Source: Epithemia pelagica
Lineage: Eukaryota; Protista; Bacillariophyta
Reading direction: 5' to 3'
NCBI GenBank assembly: GCA_946965045.2
Contig: OX337228.1
Coordinates: forward strand, 1,736,001 to 1,800,000
DNA: 64,000 nucleotides
Shown: in pieces, positions 13,590 to 21,794 of the stretch
Numbering within the stretch: the stretch's first letter is position 1
Layout of the letters: every line of letters starts with the position of its first letter
Translations under genes and position numbers: made by a program
The notes under the pieces: model-generated
What the model was told of the DNA's origin: nothing
Seen by the model: only the letters and a program-made list of their open reading frames with translations
Databases searched by the model: none

Positions 13590-16328
13590 TTATCGTTTGG
13601 TTCGTTGCCATTTGGATCCTCGTGTATCGAGTTGGATGGAGTCGTCGGTATACAAGCTTGTCGCCCGATCAATTACTTGCAATCGCAGTTCTTGAAATTG
13701 CATGGGCGACACATTGAGACTGGCACCATGCATGATAGGTTTAGTCAGTTGACCGTCGTCGGCACACAATTCCACCATTTCTCGGACCCATTGCCACTTT
13801 TTCTCTTTATCCGAGACTTGAGTATTGATCACGCGGAGCATGGTCAAGTAGGTAATGTGATTGGCCCCCACTGTGTTGCGGGCTTCCTCAAATACCTTCA
13901 TGGCAATCTCAAAGACGCGCTTGGGTCGATCCTTGGGGTGGACACTAAAGGCACACGCGTTCAAGACGTTGTTGTAGGTTTCAATCAGGGGCGCTACAGC
14001 GGCCGATTGCATACGACGCAAAATGTCCAAGGCCACCTGGGCCTTACCTGGCGTCGTTGATTTGGCAATGGCATTGATACAGCAATTGTATGTCAAATGA
14101 TGAGGCCGCATACTGGCTTGGCCTTTCAAATGAACTTCTTCCAAATGATCCAGTAGGGCCACCGCCCGTTGCATCGAGTCGTGTCGTCCCCTCGTAGCAA
14201 AGCAGTTCAAGACATTGGTAAAGGTATAGACATCAGGATTGACATCATCAAACCCCTTTTCATGCAATTCTCGCATCTCTTTCAACACGGACTCTGCTTT
14301 TTCAATCGAATCTCGTCGTTTGGCTTTGGCCAATGCTTTGAGATAGGTATCATAGGTATAACGGTTCGGTGCTGGTACGTCGTTTCCTCCTTGCGAGGAG
14401 GATCCATTGGTACCATTTGCTTTTTTCTGTTCCTCATACGAGGCCAAGGCTATGCGACGCATTTTGGCCACCATGGCTTCAATCTTTTCAAAGGCATCGG
14501 GACGATTGCTCTTGAAGCAGGCCACCAATAAGGAATTGCAGGCGGTTGTATCGACACGAATCGATGGATCGCCATCCTTTTGCTTTTGTTCCATTTCCTT
14601 GAGCAGGGCTTCTACCATGTAGCTGGCTCTTGGCAATCCGCTCTTGGCAATTAAATTCATGAGACTATTGTACAGGATGGAATCAGGTTTGGGTAAATGC
14701 TGATTGGACGGCGATCCCAGTCGGCGAAATAATGTACAGGCTCGTTGGACCTTGTCCTTGAGGTGGGATCGAGCATAGCATTTCATCAAGGTATTGTACG
14801 AACTAATCAGGGGACAGGTGTCCCGCGTGTAGCCCTTGGCGGCATGGTATCGTTCTTGGAGACGTAACAAGTTTTCAAATCGTTCGGCGGATTCACCCAA
14901 ATCGGCAAATGCCCATCGTCGAAAAACACACTGAAAGGACCAGGAATTGGGGTGCAATTCGCGATTCGTATGTCGTAACATGCGCTCCAAATGTTCTTCT
15001 GCCAAAAGTGCACCATCACGACCAGAGATTTCGTGTCGACGACAGGAAATGTCAATGGCAATAAAGTACTGATGGTAGCACAACAAATCCGGTTTCACTG
15101 CTGGATAATCTTGAGACAATTGGTCCATTTTCAGCAAGAGACGCAAAACAATTTGGCGATTGTTGTGGCTCTCCAATTGTGACGAGAAAGTCGACGAAGG
15201 AGTGGGCAAGGATGAGGGGTGGTGCTTGCCATTGTTGTCCTTGTTCGTATTTTTATGTTGTAAGGCCGAGAAGACCAGATCTTCTTCATCATCCTGACAG
15301 TCAGATTCTGCACTTGGAGGGAGGGAATTTGCATAGGCATGCATAATGGCTGCATAAGAAATGGAATTGGGAGGGAAGGAGCACTGTCCATTTTCGTACC
15401 ATTGGTACCATTGCGATAAGAAATGAACCGCCTTGCCAGGTCCTTCCGCATGACCCGATCGGGCATAGGACCACAACATCATATTCAAGGTTTCGCGGGG
15501 CGGCCATTCTTCCTGCTCCAGCTGGTCTTGGCTATGCTCCGCTGCCGTGTTGTTGTTATGATGATAGCCATTTTTGTCAGCTGTGGCGTTGGACCACGGT
15601 ACGATTGCGGTAGTTGCCACAGTTTGACTGGAATTGGCTGGTACAACAAGTTCCTCTTCTTGTTGGCCTTTTGGAGGTGCTCCAATGGGATTGTACTGGT
15701 CCATCATGTGTTGAATAATTTCTTGGGCTCGATCCAAGCCGGAAATGTCTCCACTTTTGGTCCAACTGGTAATCAACGAGATATAGGCTGGCGCCAAAAT
15801 CCATCGATTCAAGAGGGTATTACCTGCCGCTTGTTCTTGCCGCAATCGATACACAACACGTTCCATGGTGACCGAGACTTGGGGTCGTCGTCGAATTTCC
15901 GAAACCTTTTGAAGCAAGAACAAGGCCTTGTCTATCATGGAACGATCCAAGGCACCAACAGGTACGGCTGTTCCATTGGGTTTGACAAACAATAGGGATG
16001 CTTCTTTCTCCACTTGCCAAGTGGAGTAGGGATAATACTGGTTTGGATTGGGATGCGCAGCATTATAATAACCATTTTGGTTGTTCGAAGCAAAAGTGGT
16101 AGAAGAACTCGTCGTTGTCACTCCATAATGATGGTTCTCATTCTCCTCGTTCCTACGGTGACTATTGTGCGTGGGCGTTGCCCTTTTGTGGGTGGAAACA
16201 ATCGAGGCAACCACCAAGCTTCTTTGGCTGGTGGTCAAGAGGGCATCCAGTCTCGTAAGGCTGAAGCAACACCACCAAAAGGTTGAAATGGCGGCGGTTA
16301 CCACCCACCCGCTTCTCTTTCTTCGCAT
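13590..16328 (-). CDS. Pentatricopeptide-repeat (PPR) protein, probably plastid-targeted
   Basis: About 11 PPR-like units (PNSISYAAIMHAYA, PDSILYNSLMNLIAKSG, PNRYTYDTYLKALA, PDVYTFTNVLNCFA, etc.). A hydrophobic signal peptide ends at LDA|L and is followed by an S/T-rich transit-like region. First ATG at 16328. Confidence 0.88.
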   Translation of the reverse strand: MRRKRSGWVVTAAISTFWWCCFSLTRLDALLTTSQRSLVVASIVSTHKRATPTHNSHRRNEENENHHYGVTTTSSSTTFASNNQNGYYNAAHPNPNQYYPYSTWQVEKEASLLFVKPNGTAVPVGALDRSMIDKALFLLQKVSEIRRRPQVSVTMERVVYRLRQEQAAGNTLLNRWILAPAYISLITSWTKSGDISGLDRAQEIIQHMMDQYNPIGAPPKGQQEEELVVPANSSQTVATTAIVPWSNATADKNGYHHNNNTAAEHSQDQLEQEEWPPRETLNMMLWSYARSGHAEGPGKAVHFLSQWYQWYENGQCSFPPNSISYAAIMHAYANSLPPSAESDCQDDEEDLVFSALQHKNTNKDNNGKHHPSSLPTPSSTFSSQLESHNNRQIVLRLLLKMDQLSQDYPAVKPDLLCYHQYFIAIDISCRRHEISGRDGALLAEEHLERMLRHTNRELHPNSWSFQCVFRRWAFADLGESAERFENLLRLQERYHAAKGYTRDTCPLISSYNTLMKCYARSHLKDKVQRACTLFRRLGSPSNQHLPKPDSILYNSLMNLIAKSGLPRASYMVEALLKEMEQKQKDGDPSIRVDTTACNSLLVACFKSNRPDAFEKIEAMVAKMRRIALASYEEQKKANGTNGSSSQGGNDVPAPNRYTYDTYLKALAKAKRRDSIEKAESVLKEMRELHEKGFDDVNPDVYTFTNVLNCFATRGRHDSMQRAVALLDHLEEVHLKGQASMRPHHLTYNCCINAIAKSTTPGKAQVALDILRRMQSAAVAPLIETYNNVLNACAFSVHPKDRPKRVFEIAMKVFEEARNTVGANHITYLTMLRVINTQVSDKEKKWQWVREMVELCADDGQLTKPIMHGASLNVSPMQFQELRLQVIDRATSLYTDDSIQLDTRGSKWQRTKR

Positions 16329-17141
16329 CCTCAAGGAACGAAGGAATGTACCAATGAGAGTATGTCAAGCCGGCCGTGTGTTATGGTGTGTACTTGAAGA
16401 AGACAAACAACTCTCTTTCATCCATTCATGACAAGCAATCGAGGACGGGCACCACTACCACAACAACAAAACAGGACTTGCGCCTATTGGGACCGCCCAC
16501 AGTTCCTTTTGGTTGGAGAATCCTTTCCTGCAATAGTTCGGGTGCTCTCCACAGAAGATTGCGTTCTTGAAAAAATGGCACCGCTACTAAATCGCCATAC
16601 GAGGCCACGCCCTCTTTTGCCTTGCACAAACGATTCGTCGTACGATCCAGTCTATCGTGGAGCCAACGTTGTCGTCCTGACGAGAGAATACGAATGATGT
16701 TGCAGCAAAGAATAACACAAACCTCAACAATACACACAGAAACAGAATGTGATGGGTTCGTCCCTTTTTTTGTTATTGTTGTGCGTGTGTGCGTGGTCCG
16801 TGTTGGTGCGTGGTGTGTTCGCCGCGTCTCTTCGTCTGTCTGCCGCCATCATGGGCCGACCGTTGCCCCAAAACACAACACATAGGCACCATATTAGCAG
16901 CCGCTATATAAACATGGCTTTCCAGTTTCAAGTGGACCAAGTGAAAGAACGAAACACCCAGGTTGATTCTATGAACAAGTATCTCTCTAAAGACGTAATC
17001 GCTTCTTCTTAGGGAGAAAGGAAACAATTTCCCAAACGCGTCTCAACGCATTGTTTATCCGTAGCCGCGGATGTCGCTTTTTGCATTGCGCGATTCTGGT
17101 TTCCAATTGATACTCCCAGGCAACTGCGCGTCTATATATAT

Positions 17142-20100
17142 CTATGAGCCTTGTTCCACCGCCGCGGCAAGTTCGACAAGCGCTTCTTCCACCAATGAGC
17201 TCAACACACCTTGTTCTCGTAAATGCAAGGACAGTACATGATCGTCATAGTCGTGCGCAATCAACTGCAGGTTCTCTTGCTGGTTGGATGCTGGCTGTTG
17301 TAGTGGTGTCGACGACAACAAACTCACTTGTCGGACATCTTCCGGACAATAACGACCGTAATGGATGCGATACCGAGTTCTTTGCTTGCAAGACGACGAC
17401 GCTGTTCCTTGTACCGATTCCAAAATTTGGGTTTGATAGTCTTGTCGAAGGGTGGAGGTGAAATCGCATCGAGTAATGGCGGGATAGGATTGCAAATCAA
17501 TTTGGGGGGTAAAACACAAGACACCGTGCGCCAAGGAGGAAAATCGGAGTGCGGCACCTCCACCCATGGAATCTCCCAAGTACAGGATACAACGGTATCC
17601 TGCCACTCGTTGCGTCAATTCCTTCAAATAATAGGAATATCCCTGCCATTGACATGTGGGATCTTGACTATACCACGAAAAGGCCGGATCCAACACTTGT
17701 AAGACATGCCACTTGCTTTGTGGAGGTGTCCCACCAATGGTCGTGTTGTCCTTTGGTTCTTGTTGCTGCTTTGACAAGAAACTTTGAATGGTGCCATTCC
17801 ACTCCGGTCGCGCCAGGCCCGATCCCAAACTACTAAAGACCACCAACAAATTGCATTCGGCCCGTGCTTCAAGGTCGTTTGGTTTATCGTGCCAAAAGGC
17901 AAATCGGTCTTTTCCACCATGCCACCATGACGAAAAGGCTTCCTCCAACAGCACAGATGGTACTTGTGCTGCACCAGTGCTACTCTCTTTCTTCTTACCC
18001 AATCTTGTGGATGCCTCATGAGCCTTGAACAAGGCCAAAAGGAAACAAACCGAAAATTCATTCACGGGCAATAACGATCCCGCCCGTCGAGCCAAACTGG
18101 GAGATTCCATGATCCACATGGTACCCGTCAATTGATACAAAGCCTGGACATCACTCAAATCAGTACTAATACTAGCAAAATCCTTCTTTTCTTCATCATC
18201 CTTGTCTGTCTGGGCTCGTTTTCGCGCGGCCTTGGCGGTGGCCAATACCTCTTGTTTACGCTCACGTGACGCTGGATTCAAGAGTGCGGCAATCAACTCT
18301 TGGTACATGTCATGCTTTTCTGTTTCCGAACAATTCAAAAAGGTTAAAACAAACGTCATGGCAGCCATGTAATAATTCGGTTCCTGACGTCCCTGCTTTT
18401 GTTGTTCCTCCCACAGGTGCAAATCAAATCGGGTGGTGTAATGGGGATGACCGGCAACGTCGTCCGTCGAGTCATTTGGTACGTCTTTGCTCATGACCAA
18501 TCGATAGAGTTGGTGACAAGCCGCTCGGGCATATTCCTTTTCGGCAATGGTTTGCGGTGACTCTTGTTTTTCGTCTTCTCCTTCTTGTGCAAACATGTGT
18601 TGTTCTTGAAACCAATCACGAGCTAGGGTAAAGTACAAGACGGGTCGATCTTGAAGACTGAGATTGGCCAAACCACGATGAAAGACACGGACGTCAAAAA
18701 CAATGGCGGATCCGGCCGGAACAAGTGCCCGAATGGCCCGTTCATGACAGGGTGAGACCGCGTGTTGTGAATTCTTGTCCTTGTCTTGTTGCTGTGCCCA
18801 CAAGACGAGATCTGGTGCCCATTCATTGTAATAGGCATCGACATGAGAGCGAGGGACGAACTCGGTTGTTCCATTTTCTTCGTCAACATTAATGAGGGGA
18901 ACAAACACATTGAAACAATGGGTCGGATGATGCTTTTGAGGGTTGGCAAACAAGGAGGGACCATCGCGATGCCAAAATTGTGCCGGTGGTACTGGATCCT
19001 CTTGAGAGGCTCGTGCAAAGGCATGGACTACACCTCCATGCAATACCTTGAGCGTCGGAAAGGACGATGCTGCATCTCCTTCTCCTTCGGTTGGAAACAA
19101 GAGACGACCAAGTTGTTGCGCAAGTTTTTGAGCCAATTGTGCCAGGGGAGACTGTGAATCCGACAAGATGCCATAGCGATTGTCCACGCGATGTCCTGGT
19201 CGTTGTCGAACATGGACCATGTCGAACGCCTCTGCTCCGTTCACGGACAAACCCAAAGGATCCAATTTGTCTCGTTGCAATTGTTCCAAAGCCTTGTCTG
19301 CTTGTTGTCGATAGGAGTCGAGTAGCGTATCCATGGTAGAGCTGCCGTCATGGTTATCCTCGGAATACAAAGACGTGAGCAAGTCGGGGACAATGACCAT
19401 GCCATATTCGTCAAAGATTTGCCCAATTCGTTCATCTACCTTGTCGTCGTCATGATCCACCCGGACCGTGGTCGTGACTGTTTCCATGGTGATAGGCTTT
19501 GGGGTGCTATCCCGGTTGTCCTTCTTTTCTGACGGCGACACAACGGCTTGTGAATCTTGCTGTTTGTCAGGTCGACGAATCAAGGCTTTGGTCGCTCGCT
19601 CCAGTGCCTCGATTTGTTCCTTTGTTTGCTTCGATGCATTCGGACTTGTTGGAAAAGACTTGTCGAAATGAAGTTGTCCTAATCGATATATGTCCCTCCA
19701 TTGGTCCCATAAGGCTTGACACGCTTGTTGAACATGACAAAAGGATATGTTCTGGTCCGAGTTGGTGAGTGCATCTTGTGTCGGTTGTTGCTGTTGTTGT
19801 TGAAGGATGCCTCGTAAACTCCGTTGCAAACCAGATTTTTTAAATCGCGACAGGGGTGGACAATATGGCCAATCCTGCTGTAATCGTTGAACCGTTTGCC
19901 ATACCATTCGAGCACTAGGGGCTGTCGTATTGCGATTGTTATTCGTCGAGTCATTTTGGTGATCCATATAGTCCTTCAAGACCTTGGATGTGGATTGCAA
20001 GTCAAACCCTTGCAAGGCCTTACGAAATTTTCCATGATACAATCCTTCTCGTATCCGTGTGACTTCAATCAAGACGAATTGGGCTCGAGGAACTACCAGC

Positions 20101-20651
20101 AAATTGTCACAAACGGCCGTTTCGGTCATCCAGAAACAATCGTAACAATTTCCTCGTAACAAGGTCAAGAAATTATAATCGTCCATTCCTCCCTCCAATG
20201 CCAAGATCAAATCGCGCCATCGATCGCTCACCAATGGATTCCGACCAACCATGGAATTACCACCACCGGATCCAGCCTCCGCCACGGCAATGTCTTGAAT
20301 ATTAAAGTAGGCACCAAAGTTGGATCGAAATCGTTTCCATAACCGTACATCTTCCTCGGGCGAAACCAAGACCAGTTCTTTGGTATAATGACAACTCAAG
20401 TGGCTGTTGTTGCTGCTAGTGTTCTCATCCCCATTCGTCTCGGAGATGATCTTCTCCTCATCATCGTCATCGTCTTCATCGGCCTCTTGCTGCCATAGGG
20501 GATCCAACAAGTGCGAATCTTTTCGTGCCGCTTGCGCCAATCGTTTCCAAAATTGTAGTGCATAAACAGCAGTGGCATTCGCTCCCAATCGTTCAATTTC
20601 TGGATCGTTGCTAATATCCAAGGCAAAGCCATCGATGATTTCCTCCTCCAT
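17142..20651 (-). CDS. Multidomain protein: PBDC1/Chp1-like domain + PhyH-type Fe(II)/2OG dioxygenase + alpha/beta hydrolase
   Basis: One uninterrupted ORF. N-terminal domain: SNDPEIE...DYNFLTLLR...VPRAQFVLIEVTRIREG. Middle: WHRDG...NVFVPL..VDEENGTTEFVPRSH...AGSAIVFDVRVFHRGLAN..DRPVLY. C-terminal: LVVFSSLG...LGDSMGGGAAL...DDH. Confidence 0.8.
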   Translation of the reverse strand: MEEEIIDGFALDISNDPEIERLGANATAVYALQFWKRLAQAARKDSHLLDPLWQQEADEDDDDDEEKIISETNGDENTSSNNSHLSCHYTKELVLVSPEEDVRLWKRFRSNFGAYFNIQDIAVAEAGSGGGNSMVGRNPLVSDRWRDLILALEGGMDDYNFLTLLRGNCYDCFWMTETAVCDNLLVVPRAQFVLIEVTRIREGLYHGKFRKALQGFDLQSTSKVLKDYMDHQNDSTNNNRNTTAPSARMVWQTVQRLQQDWPYCPPLSRFKKSGLQRSLRGILQQQQQQPTQDALTNSDQNISFCHVQQACQALWDQWRDIYRLGQLHFDKSFPTSPNASKQTKEQIEALERATKALIRRPDKQQDSQAVVSPSEKKDNRDSTPKPITMETVTTTVRVDHDDDKVDERIGQIFDEYGMVIVPDLLTSLYSEDNHDGSSTMDTLLDSYRQQADKALEQLQRDKLDPLGLSVNGAEAFDMVHVRQRPGHRVDNRYGILSDSQSPLAQLAQKLAQQLGRLLFPTEGEGDAASSFPTLKVLHGGVVHAFARASQEDPVPPAQFWHRDGPSLFANPQKHHPTHCFNVFVPLINVDEENGTTEFVPRSHVDAYYNEWAPDLVLWAQQQDKDKNSQHAVSPCHERAIRALVPAGSAIVFDVRVFHRGLANLSLQDRPVLYFTLARDWFQEQHMFAQEGEDEKQESPQTIAEKEYARAACHQLYRLVMSKDVPNDSTDDVAGHPHYTTRFDLHLWEEQQKQGRQEPNYYMAAMTFVLTFLNCSETEKHDMYQELIAALLNPASRERKQEVLATAKAARKRAQTDKDDEEKKDFASISTDLSDVQALYQLTGTMWIMESPSLARRAGSLLPVNEFSVCFLLALFKAHEASTRLGKKKESSTGAAQVPSVLLEEAFSSWWHGGKDRFAFWHDKPNDLEARAECNLLVVFSSLGSGLARPEWNGTIQSFLSKQQQEPKDNTTIGGTPPQSKWHVLQVLDPAFSWYSQDPTCQWQGYSYYLKELTQRVAGYRCILYLGDSMGGGAALRFSSLAHGVLCFTPQIDLQSYPAITRCDFTSTLRQDYQTQILESVQGTASSSCKQRTRYRIHYGRYCPEDVRQVSLLSSTPLQQPASNQQENLQLIAHDYDDHVLSLHLREQGVLSSLVEEALVELAAAVEQGS

Positions 20652-21131: not shown

Positions 21132-21794
21132 ATGATCAAGACTGTGGATCGTTCTTCTTCGTCGTCTTTTCCTGGACGGCCGCGACTCACAACCTATTTG
21201 AGCCTCGTTGTTGTGGTCATGTCTTGTGTGACGGTGGTTGTGGAAGGCCTTGAGATGCCATCTCCGCAGGTCGATACCTCTTACTTTCAGCCTAAAATGG
21301 CCACAGAACAAGACCATACCAAGAAGGACTCCAAAGAGGAAGGTGCACTCGTTGTGGTACGAAAGGAACCCCACCAAGAGGATCTGGTCGTCTCCAGAGA
21401 GTCCTCCTCCTCGTCATCTTTCAATCTTACTCAACATGAACCATGCTCCTCGTCGTCCACGACTCCAGCGTCCACCAACACTTCCTCATACCAGGCCCGA
21501 TCCGATGCCTCCAACAACCAGGAAATGGTCGACTACTTGTCACAATTGGAACAACGATTGACACGTATTGAAGATTCGCAACGTGACTTGCTTCGCATGC
21601 GAAATGAAACGAGATCGTTTGTCTTGGAGTCGATTCGGTTGATGGTGGTTTCAGCAATACCCATGATTTGCTTCGGTGTCTTGATTGCAACCTCAATGTG
21701 GGTTCTCTTTCACTTGATTGTGTGGCTCTCGGATCTTTTCTTTTTTCTAGAGTATGGTTATTTGAGCAAAAGAGTTGGAGGCTTATCGTGCTAG
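21132..21794 (+). CDS. Hypothetical membrane protein (N-terminal hydrophobic segment, coiled coil, C-terminal TM region)
   Basis: ATG-initiated 220-aa ORF with LSLVVVVMSCVTVVVEG, a heptad segment LSQLEQRLTRIEDSQRDL and a long C-terminal hydrophobic stretch. No family recognised. Confidence 0.6.
   Translation: MIKTVDRSSSSSFPGRPRLTTYLSLVVVVMSCVTVVVEGLEMPSPQVDTSYFQPKMATEQDHTKKDSKEEGALVVVRKEPHQEDLVVSRESSSSSSFNLTQHEPCSSSSTTPASTNTSSYQARSDASNNQEMVDYLSQLEQRLTRIEDSQRDLLRMRNETRSFVLESIRLMVVSAIPMICFGVLIATSMWVLFHLIVWLSDLFFFLEYGYLSKRVGGLSC

What the first reader, a model, noticed from the sequence alone, without database searches (positions are those of the whole stretch)
17142..20651. Three-part fusion: eEF1A-chaperone-like PBDC1/Chp1 domain + Fe/2OG dioxygenase + alpha/beta hydrolase
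Seen: one stop-free ORF of about 1170 codons. It has a PBDC1-like N-domain (about 20620-20036: SNDPEIE, DYNFLTLLR, PRAQFVLIEVTRIREG), a PhyH fold with intact HxD (18971-18963), distal His (18680) and 2OG Arg, and a hydrolase with a GDSMGG nucleophile (Ser at 17570) and a C-terminal His. Established: PBDC1/Ypl225w (Chp1) is normally a small stand-alone ribosome-associated chaperone for nascent eEF1A, and other 2OG oxygenases hydroxylate translation components. Inference: this could be a translation-factor modification module in which the chaperone domain delivers eEF1A or another nascent chain to a hydroxylase and an esterase. I know of no description of this architecture.
Basis: partly seen in the sequence, partly recalled or inferred. 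Interest (0 to 1): 0.85.

Follow-up and report, generated by a model that had tools for sequence, protein, structure and literature searches.

The report
Chaperone-like domain fused to two enzymes
One intron-free gene of this alga, reported by other notes of this scan to be a diatom, joins a diverged copy of the small eEF1A chaperone PBDC1/Chp1 to an iron/2-oxoglutarate oxygenase and a serine hydrolase; the fusion is real, is conserved among relatives and I found no paper on it, but what it acts on is still unknown.

Summary
Window 17142-20651 (- strand) is one 1,169-codon ORF. Pfam finds PBDC1 and PhyH, both above their gathering cut-offs. The C-terminus folds as an alpha/beta hydrolase with an invariant Ser1028-Asp1105-His1138 triad. 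Two further conserved helical regions lie between the domains. Twenty-six full-length orthologues (33-40% identity) keep the same order, and so does a compact version in NCBI assembly GCA_000186865.1.

The N-domain is homologous to yeast Chp1/Ypl225w over its whole length. However, Phe19, which Chp1 needs to bind eEF1A, is a near-invariant Gly here. The oxygenase is closest to KanJ and other small-molecule enzymes. The helical-plus-hydrolase module belongs to a large family with no Pfam model (1,071 representatives). That family also occurs alone, after LRR or carrier-protein modules, and once in front of a similar PhyH domain.

My best reading (about 45%) is a cytosolic oxygenase-hydrolase pair that acts in succession on one substrate, with the PBDC1 domain repurposed as a binding or scaffold module. 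Targeting of an elongation factor remains possible (about 20%). I found no paper that describes this architecture. Other notes from this scan report another PBDC1-oxygenase fusion elsewhere in this genome; I did not check that.

The parts
17142..20651 (-). Complete CDS, 1169 aa plus stop (stop codon 17142-17144). No intron is indicated.
   Evidence: Colinear from the first to the last residue with 26 orthologues. No joints in the laid contigs.
20007..20621 (-). Divergent PBDC1/Chp1-like domain (aa 11-215) with an acidic, low-complexity insertion (aa about 55-90).
   Evidence: Pfam PF04669 scores 33 bits, above the cut-off. The family profile hits PDB 2jyn (Ypl225w) at E 1.6e-8. Orthologue P0068 aligns to Ypl225w residues 10-140 in one stretch, E 1.3e-6.
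20517..20609 (-). N-terminal helix (aa 15-45, NDPEIERLGANATAVYALQFWKRL), the counterpart of the client-binding helix of Chp1. It has Gly23 where Ypl225w has Phe19.
   Evidence: Ungapped alignments to 2jyn. E20, R21, L22, G23, A24 and N25 are at least 90% conserved. The role of F19 comes from PMC11790920.
19452..20006 (-). Conserved helical linker region (aa 216-400), with invariant W261-P262..P265 and W318 and a disordered tail (aa about 359-400).
   Evidence: Helices with pLDDT about 60-80 in the full-length model. No Pfam family.
18552..19451 (-). PhyH-type Fe(II)/2-oxoglutarate oxygenase domain (aa 401-700), KanJ-like.
   Evidence: Pfam PF05721, 51.9 bits. The profile hits KanJ at 69 bits, E 2.5e-18. 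Foldseek of the model puts KanJ first, about 300 columns, TM by target 0.56-0.60.
18963..18971 (-). HxD of the iron-binding triad (His561, Asp563, within WHRDG).
   Evidence: Invariant in 27 sequences. Aligned to the H-x-D of KanJ.
18645..18680 (-). Distal His658 (HRG) and Arg669, the presumed 2-oxoglutarate-binding Arg.
   Evidence: Invariant. Aligned to 'WHRG...RP' of KanJ. The role of the Arg is inferred from knowledge of the PhyH family.
17922..18551 (-). Helical 'Mid' domain (aa 701-910) with the motifs GHPHYT (734-739) and DFASIxTDxSDVxxLY (824-839). It forms one unit with the hydrolase.
   Evidence: The AF2 model of aa 700-1169 has pTM 0.80. Mid and C-domain occur together in stand-alone proteins. 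No Pfam family.
17145..17921 (-). Minimal alpha/beta-hydrolase domain (aa 911-1169) of a family that has no Pfam model.
   Evidence: Foldseek gives 139 PDB hits at E<=1e-3. VIA-align gives Z 14.3. ESM Atlas features score 0.95-0.96 to alpha/beta hydrolase clusters.
17568..17570 (-). Nucleophile Ser1028 in GDSMG.
   Evidence: Invariant. Ser in 117 and Cys in 8 of 127 aligned family representatives.
17337..17339 (-). Triad acid Asp1105, in the loop after strand beta7 (1093-1099).
   Evidence: Invariant. Asp in 109 of 117 aligned representatives.
17238..17240 (-). Triad His1138, in the loop after strand beta8 (1128-1133).
   Evidence: Invariant. His in 106 of 111 aligned representatives.

Best explanation
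This is a real, probably cytosolic, multi-domain enzyme that is conserved in diatom-like algae and in a distant relative (a pelagophyte, if my memory of the assembly's organism is right). Shown: a KanJ-like PhyH Fe(II)/2OG oxygenase with an intact HxD...H...R site, and a minimal alpha/beta hydrolase with an intact Ser-Asp-His triad, lie in one polypeptide behind a diverged PBDC1/Chp1-like domain. Inferred: the two catalytic modules act one after the other on the same substrate. The oxygenase would oxidise a C-H bond, and the hydrolase would cleave or transfer an ester, thioester or amide bond of the same molecule. The substrate is more likely a small molecule or an acyl-thioester than a translation factor. 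Also inferred: the PBDC1-derived domain has lost the Chp1-type client patch. It would serve as a binding, scaffold or regulatory module with a new specificity, not as an eEF1A chaperone.
For: One ORF, with an architecture conserved in 26 orthologues and in the compact version P0068 from NCBI assembly GCA_000186865.1. Catalytic residues of both enzymes are invariant. The hydrolase triad is kept in 93 of 105 family representatives. The same hydrolase family is fused to a similar PhyH domain in the opposite order in P0090, which is a second, independent link between the two activities. The nearest solved relatives of the oxygenase are small-molecule enzymes: KanJ, DhiD, FtmOx1, PrhA, SnoK and a leucine hydroxylase. 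The hydrolase family also follows AMP-binding, PP-binding and KR modules and an aminotransferase, which is a small-molecule or thioester context. Phe19 of Ypl225w aligns to a conserved Gly, and Leu12 and Val21/22/24 align to Asp and to Asn/Ala/Ala (PMC11790920). The N-terminus is acidic and lacks the hydrophobic start seen in several stand-alone paralogues.
Against: No substrate was identified and no assay was run. The PBDC1 domain is under strong constraint (ERLGAN, DYNFxTLLR and VVPRAQF are conserved), so it does something specific, and the only known PBDC1 function is binding nascent eEF1A. Earlier notes from this scan, which I did not check, report a second PBDC1-oxygenase fusion (EGLN type, a class that hydroxylates proteins) and an eEF1A methyltransferase with an eEF1B 'handle' in the same genome. 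That pattern favours protein targeting. The most common partner of the hydrolase family is LRR (32 of 58), which is a protein-binding module. The full-length AF2 model is poor (pTM 0.43, N-domain pLDDT below 50), so it gives no information on how the domains pack.
Confidence: 0.45

Rival explanations
1. The PBDC1-like domain still recognises the nascent or nucleotide-free G domain of the main elongation factor (eEF1A, or EFL in diatoms) or docks on NAC at the ribosome. It thereby presents that protein to the oxygenase and the hydrolase for hydroxylation and removal of an ester or acyl group.
For: The N-domain is homologous to Chp1/Ypl225w over the whole domain. Part of the helix face stays hydrophobic (I19, A26, Y30, F34, L38). 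There is a precedent for 2OG oxygenases hydroxylating the switch I loop of EF-Tu (PMC4682802). Earlier notes that I did not check report a PBDC1 + EGLN-type oxygenase fusion and an eEF1A methyltransferase + eEF1B-domain fusion in this genome.
Against: Phe19, which is essential for eEF1A binding, is a conserved Gly, and the neighbouring hydrophobic residues are small or polar. All of the nearest solved relatives of the PhyH domain act on small molecules. Most diatoms examined use EFL, and their eEF1A is divergent and weakly expressed (PMC3699394), yet the fusion is broadly conserved. The hydrolase-PhyH link also exists without any PBDC1 domain (P0090).
Confidence: 0.2
2. A protein-directed enzyme with a different client. 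The PBDC1-derived domain has evolved to bind some other protein, for example another GTPase, which is then hydroxylated or de-acylated.
For: A new, strongly conserved surface motif (ERLGAN) replaces the Chp1 patch. Catalytically dead paralogues that keep the non-catalytic domains exist (P0061, P0063), which suggests that the scaffold has binding functions of its own. LRR partners are common in the hydrolase family.
Against: No candidate client is known. The oxygenase subfamily has no known protein substrates among its nearest solved relatives.
Confidence: 0.15
3. A mainly non-catalytic scaffold or regulator, in which the enzyme-like domains act as binding modules (a pseudoenzyme).
For: Dead paralogues exist in relatives: P0061 has HxD changed to HRP, the distal His to Arg and the Ser to Ala, and P0063 has no PhyH domain and lacks the Ser and the His.
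Against: In this protein and in all 26 orthologues every catalytic residue of both domains is invariant.
Confidence: 0.05
4. An artefact: two or three adjacent genes read through as one ORF, or separate transcripts from one ORF.
For: No run on record as RNA holds the stretch. Prokaryote-style gene calling split one orthologue into 606 + 430 aa.
Against: The frame is uninterrupted. The order is the same in 26 orthologues, several of them on 3.2-3.5 kb contigs that carry only this ORF with short flanks. Conserved sequence runs across every domain junction. Run X4, which looks like RNA, has low-depth pieces in all parts of the gene.
Confidence: 0.03

Closest known systems
PBDC1 / Chp1 (Ypl225w), the ribosome-associated chaperone of nascent eEF1A (PF04669; PDB 2jyn)
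   Same: The sequences are homologous over the whole domain, including the long N-terminal helix (NDPEIE...FW..L) and the DYNFxTLLR / RxQFxxIExAR core.
   Different: Chp1 is a stand-alone protein of about 150 aa, whereas this domain is the N-terminus of a 1,169-aa enzyme. It has an acidic insertion after the helix. Phe19, needed for eEF1A binding, is a conserved Gly, and Leu12 and Val21/22/24 are Asp and Asn/Ala/Ala. Binding to eEF1A or NAC was not tested.
KanJ (kanamycin B dioxygenase) and related PhyH-family small-molecule oxygenases (PF05721)
   Same: It has the double-stranded beta-helix fold, the HxD...H iron triad and the Arg after the distal His. KanJ is the best hit by sequence (69 bits) and by structure.
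   Different: Identity is only about 20%. The domain is embedded in a multi-domain protein and carries a family-specific invariant motif, RQRPGHRVDNRY (aa 482-493), of unknown role. The substrate is unknown.
Minimal lid-less alpha/beta hydrolases (YqiA/UPF0227, YjfP, esterase D/S-formylglutathione hydrolase, Asp2, and capsule O-acetyltransferase CsaC-like enzymes)
   Same: It has the alpha/beta-hydrolase fold, a G-x-S-x-G elbow, and the acid after beta7 and the His after beta8.
   Different: It matches no Pfam or NCBIfam model. It always follows its own helical 'Mid' domain. It defines a large family (1,071 representatives at E<=1e-3) that is fused to LRR, carrier-protein/KR/AMP-binding, aminotransferase or PhyH modules.
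Translation-factor and ribosome hydroxylases (PPHD on EF-Tu, OGFOD1/Tpa1, JMJD4, JMJD7, MINA53/NO66)
   Same: They are Fe/2OG oxygenases linked to the translation machinery. Here the link comes through the Chp1-like domain (PMC4682802).
   Different: Those enzymes are of the prolyl-hydroxylase or JmjC type, not PhyH/KanJ-like. None is fused to a chaperone domain or to a hydrolase. No substrate link has been shown for the present protein.

Membership tests
PBDC1 (PF04669) | Matches the Pfam model above its gathering score | tested here: met
   33 bits against 28.5 in this protein and 49 bits over profile positions 1-123 in orthologue P0068. All 26 orthologues carry PF04669.
PBDC1 (PF04669) | Homology to the solved Ypl225w structure over the whole domain, N-terminal helix included | tested here: met
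   Family profile against 2jyn gives E 1.6e-8. P0068 aa 6-135 aligns to 2jyn residues 10-140 at E 1.3e-6. The fold itself was not confirmed, because the AF2 pLDDT is below 50 for aa 1-210.
Chp1/Ypl225w-type eEF1A chaperone (function) | Hydrophobic patch on the N-terminal helix, with Phe19 required for eEF1A binding | tested here: not met
   Phe19 aligns to Gly23 (at least 90% conserved), Leu12 to Asp16 and Val21 to Asn25. The requirement comes from PMC11790920.
Chp1/Ypl225w-type eEF1A chaperone (function) | Small stand-alone protein | tested here: not met
   It is the N-terminal domain of a 1,169-aa protein.
Chp1/Ypl225w-type eEF1A chaperone (function) | Binds nascent eEF1A domain I and the UBA domain of alpha-NAC | not testable with these tools
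   No multimer prediction or binding assay was available.
PhyH-type Fe(II)/2OG oxygenase (PF05721) | Matches the Pfam model above its gathering score | tested here: met
   51.9 bits against a cut-off of 22.
PhyH-type Fe(II)/2OG oxygenase (PF05721) | HxD...H iron triad and the Arg that binds 2-oxoglutarate | tested here: met
   H561, D563, H658 and R669 are invariant in 27 sequences and are aligned to the corresponding KanJ residues. The role of the Arg is inferred.
PhyH-type Fe(II)/2OG oxygenase (PF05721) | Double-stranded beta-helix fold | tested here: met
   Foldseek puts KanJ first at E 6e-8, about 300 columns, TM by target 0.56-0.60.
alpha/beta hydrolase superfamily | alpha/beta-hydrolase fold | tested here: met
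   Model pLDDT 79. 139 Foldseek hits at E<=1e-3. VIA-align Z 14.3, rmsd 3.6 A, 208 residues aligned.
alpha/beta hydrolase superfamily | Nucleophile elbow G-x-S-x-G, acid after beta7 and His after beta8 | tested here: met
   G1026-D-S1028-M-G1030, D1105 and H1138 are invariant. Ser/Asp/His is present in 93 of 105 family representatives.
any curated hydrolase family (Pfam, NCBIfam) | Matches a curated model | tested here: not met
   No hit at E<=1 for aa 900-1169. The profile against the PDB gives only 4lxg at E 0.78.

The most novel reading that the evidence does not exclude
The PBDC1-derived domain is a built-in handle for the unfolded or nucleotide-free G domain of the cell's main elongation factor (eEF1A, or EFL in diatoms). 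The protein would then be a co-translational modifying machine that hydroxylates the factor and removes an ester or acyl group while it folds. It would be the first case of a dedicated chaperone domain fused to enzymes that modify its client. The conserved Phe-to-Gly change would then be an adaptation to a different switch region.
Probability: 0.15. Interest if true: 0.85.

Novelty: new variant of a known kind. Interest (0 to 1): 0.58.

Why it matters
PBDC1/Chp1 was recognised as a dedicated eEF1A chaperone only in 2024-2025, and it is known only as a small stand-alone protein. Here a diverged copy is permanently joined to two apparently active enzymes, and the fusion is old: it is shared by many diatom-like lineages and by a distant relative. 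This gives a concrete test of whether the PBDC1 fold can be reused as a targeting module. If the client is still an elongation factor, it would point to an unknown modification of the translation machinery in major marine primary producers. Independently, the work defines a large alpha/beta-hydrolase family with its own helical domain that has no Pfam model. That family recurs with LRR, carrier-protein and oxygenase partners and has no characterised member.

Tried and rejected
1. Is the Mid motif DFASIxTDxSD a phosphopantetheine site, making Mid a carrier-protein-like domain? Rejected. There is no PP-binding hit. The Ser (S833) is Asn in one orthologue and is not conserved in the wider family. 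In proteins that do have PP-binding, that domain lies far upstream, before the LRRs.

2. Search for stand-alone PBDC1 proteins and other PBDC1 fusions. The word-indexed searches with N-domain profiles gave only fragments or orthologues and one partial canonical PBDC1 (P0057). The metagenome scan gave nine loci, all of the fusion type. I therefore could not tell whether this genome also has a canonical PBDC1, and I could not retrieve the PBDC1 + EGLN-type fusion reported in note s1-242529.

3. Full-length AF2 model. It was too weak (pTM 0.43; aa 1-210 below pLDDT 50) to say whether the N-terminal helix is free or packed against another domain.

4. RNA evidence. No run on record as RNA holds the stretch, and only contigs could be laid. 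X1-X3 look like DNA because their depth is flat. X4 looks like RNA: depth is 124-142 at the two ends of the laid stretch and 2-7 in short pieces across this gene. It cannot show a single transcript.

5. Within-species differences (12 in the CDS, 9 of them non-synonymous). They are too few to measure selection, and none touches an invariant column.

6. Peroxisomal targeting, as in animal PhyH. I saw no C-terminal SKL-like signal and no N-terminal presequence. This was by eye only.
Full report
**The observation**

The - strand of the window carries one open frame from 20684 to 17142. The first ATG is at 20651 and gives a protein of 1,169 aa. Its start and end coincide with those of its orthologues. 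No introns are indicated: the protein is colinear with 26 orthologues, and the laid contigs show no joints.

Pfam finds PBDC1 (33 bits, cut-off 28.5, aa 142-204) and PhyH (51.9 bits, cut-off 22, aa 550-670). They are invariant in a 27-sequence alignment: H561, D563, H658, R669, G1026-D-S1028-M-G1030 and D1136-D-H1138.

**The C-terminal hydrolase**

No Pfam or NCBIfam model matches the C-terminus. A profile of it finds no solved relative by sequence; the best is 4lxg at E 0.78.

An AlphaFold2 model of aa 700-1169, built from the orthologue alignment, has pLDDT 79 and pTM 0.80. It shows a helical domain (about 701-910) packed on a six-stranded alpha/beta domain.

- Foldseek finds 139 PDB matches at E<=1e-3, all alpha/beta hydrolases: esterase D/S-formylglutathione hydrolases, FrsA, AntI and monoglyceride lipase.
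- An independent all-against-all structural search gives Z 14.3 (rmsd 3.6 A, 208 residues) and 408 chains at Z>=8. These include YqiA, YjfP, a capsule O-acetyltransferase, the thioesterase DcsB and ABHD10.
- Ser1028 follows strand 1021-1027, Asp1105 follows strand 1093-1099 and His1138 follows strand 1128-1133. These are the canonical triad positions.

**Conservation of the architecture**

A search of 5.8 billion clustered proteins found 26 full-length relatives (966-1280 aa, 33-40% identity, 97-99% coverage). All carry PF04669 and PF05721. One apparent two-domain version (P0056, 606 aa) is followed within about 95 nt by a 430-aa gene on the same strand. It is most likely the same gene split by an intron or by prokaryote-style gene calling.

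Several orthologues lie on contigs of 3.2-3.5 kb. One that I examined carries only this ORF, with a 42-nt and a 229-nt flank. That is what a transcript would look like, although I could not verify the library type.

A compact 872-aa version with the same order (PBDC1 11-136, PhyH 267-503, hydrolase 627-870) is encoded on scaffold GL833123.1 of NCBI assembly GCA_000186865.1. From memory this is the pelagophyte Aureococcus anophagefferens; I could not check the name with the tools. Other notes from this scan call the present genome a diatom. If both statements are right, the fusion predates the split of diatoms and pelagophytes.

**The N-domain**

The family profile hits the NMR structure of yeast Ypl225w/Chp1 (2jyn) at E 1.6e-8. 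The compact orthologue aligns to residues 10-140 of Ypl225w in a single stretch at E 1.3e-6. This is therefore a genuine PBDC1 homologue, including the long N-terminal helix.

That helix is the part of Chp1 that inserts into the switch region of nascent eEF1A domain I. The F19A change abolishes binding, ribosome association and chaperone activity (PMC11790920), and Leu12 crosslinks to partners (PMC10869706).

In both alignments the register is fixed by N..IE at one end and A..(F/Y)W..L at the other. In that register Phe19 falls on Gly23, which is at least 90% conserved as part of an E-R-L-G-A-N motif. Leu12 falls on Asp16 and Val21/22/24 fall on Asn25/Ala26/Ala28. Part of the face stays hydrophobic (I19, Y30, F34, L38).

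I conclude that the domain belongs to the PBDC1 family but fails the one sequence feature that has been shown to be needed for eEF1A binding. Its specificity has probably changed. AF2 gave no confident model of this domain (pLDDT below 50), so I cannot say whether the helix is exposed.

**The oxygenase**

A profile of aa 400-700 hits kanamycin B dioxygenase KanJ best (69 bits, E 2.5e-18). Next come an unnamed oxidoreductase, DhiD, a leucine hydroxylase, FtmOx1, PrhA, SnoK, PHYHD1 and others. Foldseek on the full-length model also puts KanJ first, with about 300 aligned columns, 20-22% identity and TM by target 0.56-0.60.

All of these act on small molecules. This is evidence about ancestry, not proof of the substrate.

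**The hydrolase module is a widely reused unit**

An exhaustive HMM search of 1.84 billion representatives with the Mid + hydrolase profile found 1,071 proteins at E<=1e-3 and 357 at E<=1e-10.

- Many are stand-alone proteins of 420-560 aa that contain Mid and the hydrolase. Several have hydrophobic N-termini that look like signal peptides, which this protein lacks.
- Of 58 longer hits, 32 carry LRRs in front of the hydrolase and 6 carry a PP-binding domain. Some also carry KR or AMP-binding domains, and one carries a class-V aminotransferase.
- One of them, P0090, is a single 855-aa ORF. It has Mid + hydrolase first and a PhyH domain last. That PhyH domain has an intact HxD/H site and is 34% identical to the PhyH core here.

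The oxygenase and the hydrolase are thus joined in two different orders, once without any PBDC1 domain. This is the strongest evidence I have that the two activities work together.

Across 105 representatives that cover all three triad positions, 93 have Ser/Asp/His and several others have Cys as the nucleophile.

Two relatives are catalytically dead. P0061 has the HxD changed to HRP, the distal His changed to Arg and the Ser changed to Ala. P0063 lacks the PhyH domain and has Gly and Leu at the Ser and His positions. Both keep the N-domain, linker and Mid regions.

**How it most likely works**

Shown: one polypeptide with two intact active sites and a diverged PBDC1 domain, conserved over a long evolutionary span.

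Inferred: the oxygenase and the hydrolase act in succession on one substrate. The PhyH domain's nearest relatives and the thioester and carrier-protein context of the hydrolase family point towards a small molecule or an acyl-thioester. The logic would resemble phytanoyl-CoA hydroxylation followed by thioester cleavage. I stress that this is an analogy. The PBDC1-derived domain would then be a repurposed binding or scaffold module.

I put this reading at about 45%.

Those notes report a PBDC1 + EGLN-type oxygenase fusion and an eEF1A methyltransferase fused to an eEF1B domain in the same genome.
- Against it: the Phe19-to-Gly change, the oxygenase subfamily, and the fact that most diatoms examined use EFL while their eEF1A is divergent and weakly expressed (PMC3699394).

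A different protein client (about 15%), a pseudoenzyme role (about 5%) and a gene-model artefact (about 3%) complete the list.

**Expression**

No run on record as RNA holds the stretch. Of four runs from one study, three have flat depth like DNA. The fourth (X4) has depth 124-142 at the two ends of the laid stretch, but only 2-7 in short pieces scattered over the hydrolase, Mid, linker and N-domain regions and about 200 nt beyond the stop codon. This pattern fits a weakly expressed gene in an RNA library, but contigs cannot prove that or show a single transcript.

**Novelty**

Full-text searches for PBDC1 together with oxygenase, dioxygenase, diatom or PF04669 returned only mammalian gene lists and unrelated papers. 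The two Chp1 papers treat PBDC1 as a stand-alone protein.

The domain families are known. The architecture, the diverged PBDC1 subfamily and the Mid + hydrolase family are, as far as I can see, undescribed. I rate it a new variant of a known kind, with interest 0.58. It is a real, conserved and unexpected fusion with a testable hypothesis, but its function is unresolved and the most exciting reading is weakened by the sequence evidence.

Noticed in passing
It gave no Pfam hit for either domain at E<=1; only a chance-level PPP4R2 match appeared.
   Followed up: partly
window 13590-16334 (-): The downstream neighbour is a 914-aa pentatricopeptide-repeat protein (PPR_2 63 bits, PPR_3 42 bits).
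   Followed up: partly
window 21132-21794 (+): A 220-aa ORF has a sub-threshold emp24/GOLD match (21.8 bits against a cut-off of 25.9). It may be a p24 cargo receptor gene.
   Followed up: no
P0061 (1048 aa) and P0063 (897 aa; L013:516-3209): These are catalytically dead paralogues of the fusion in other diatom-like organisms. P0061 has lost the iron triad and the nucleophile. P0063 lacks the PhyH domain altogether and has lost the Ser and the His. Both keep the N-domain, linker and Mid regions.
   Followed up: partly
P0122, P0141, P0175, P0135, P0180 (hits): Long proteins with the order (KR or AMP-binding) - PP-binding - LRR array - hydrolase of this family. This is an unusual pairing of PKS/NRPS-like modules with LRRs and a C-terminal hydrolase.
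   Followed up: partly
P0075, P0081, P0089, P0092, P0093, P0117, P0119, P0132: Stand-alone Mid + hydrolase proteins start with hydrophobic, signal-peptide-like stretches, some followed by an ASAF-like motif. This hints at secretory or plastid targeting of the paralogues, unlike the fusion. It was judged by eye only.
   Followed up: no
window 20408-20574 and 19573-19950: Contigs from other loci of the same runs attach here (loose ends at 19784/19801 and 20460/20488, with raised summed depth). These places are the acidic (GAT/GAC-rich) and Gln-rich (CAG/CAA) low-complexity stretches of the gene, which are repeated elsewhere in the genome.
   Followed up: no
window 17141-19841: Thirteen single-base differences separate the window from contigs of runs X1-X3. 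Twelve are in the CDS: 9 non-synonymous, all at variable columns, and one (H745L) restores the family consensus. They are probably allelic or strain variation.
   Followed up: partly
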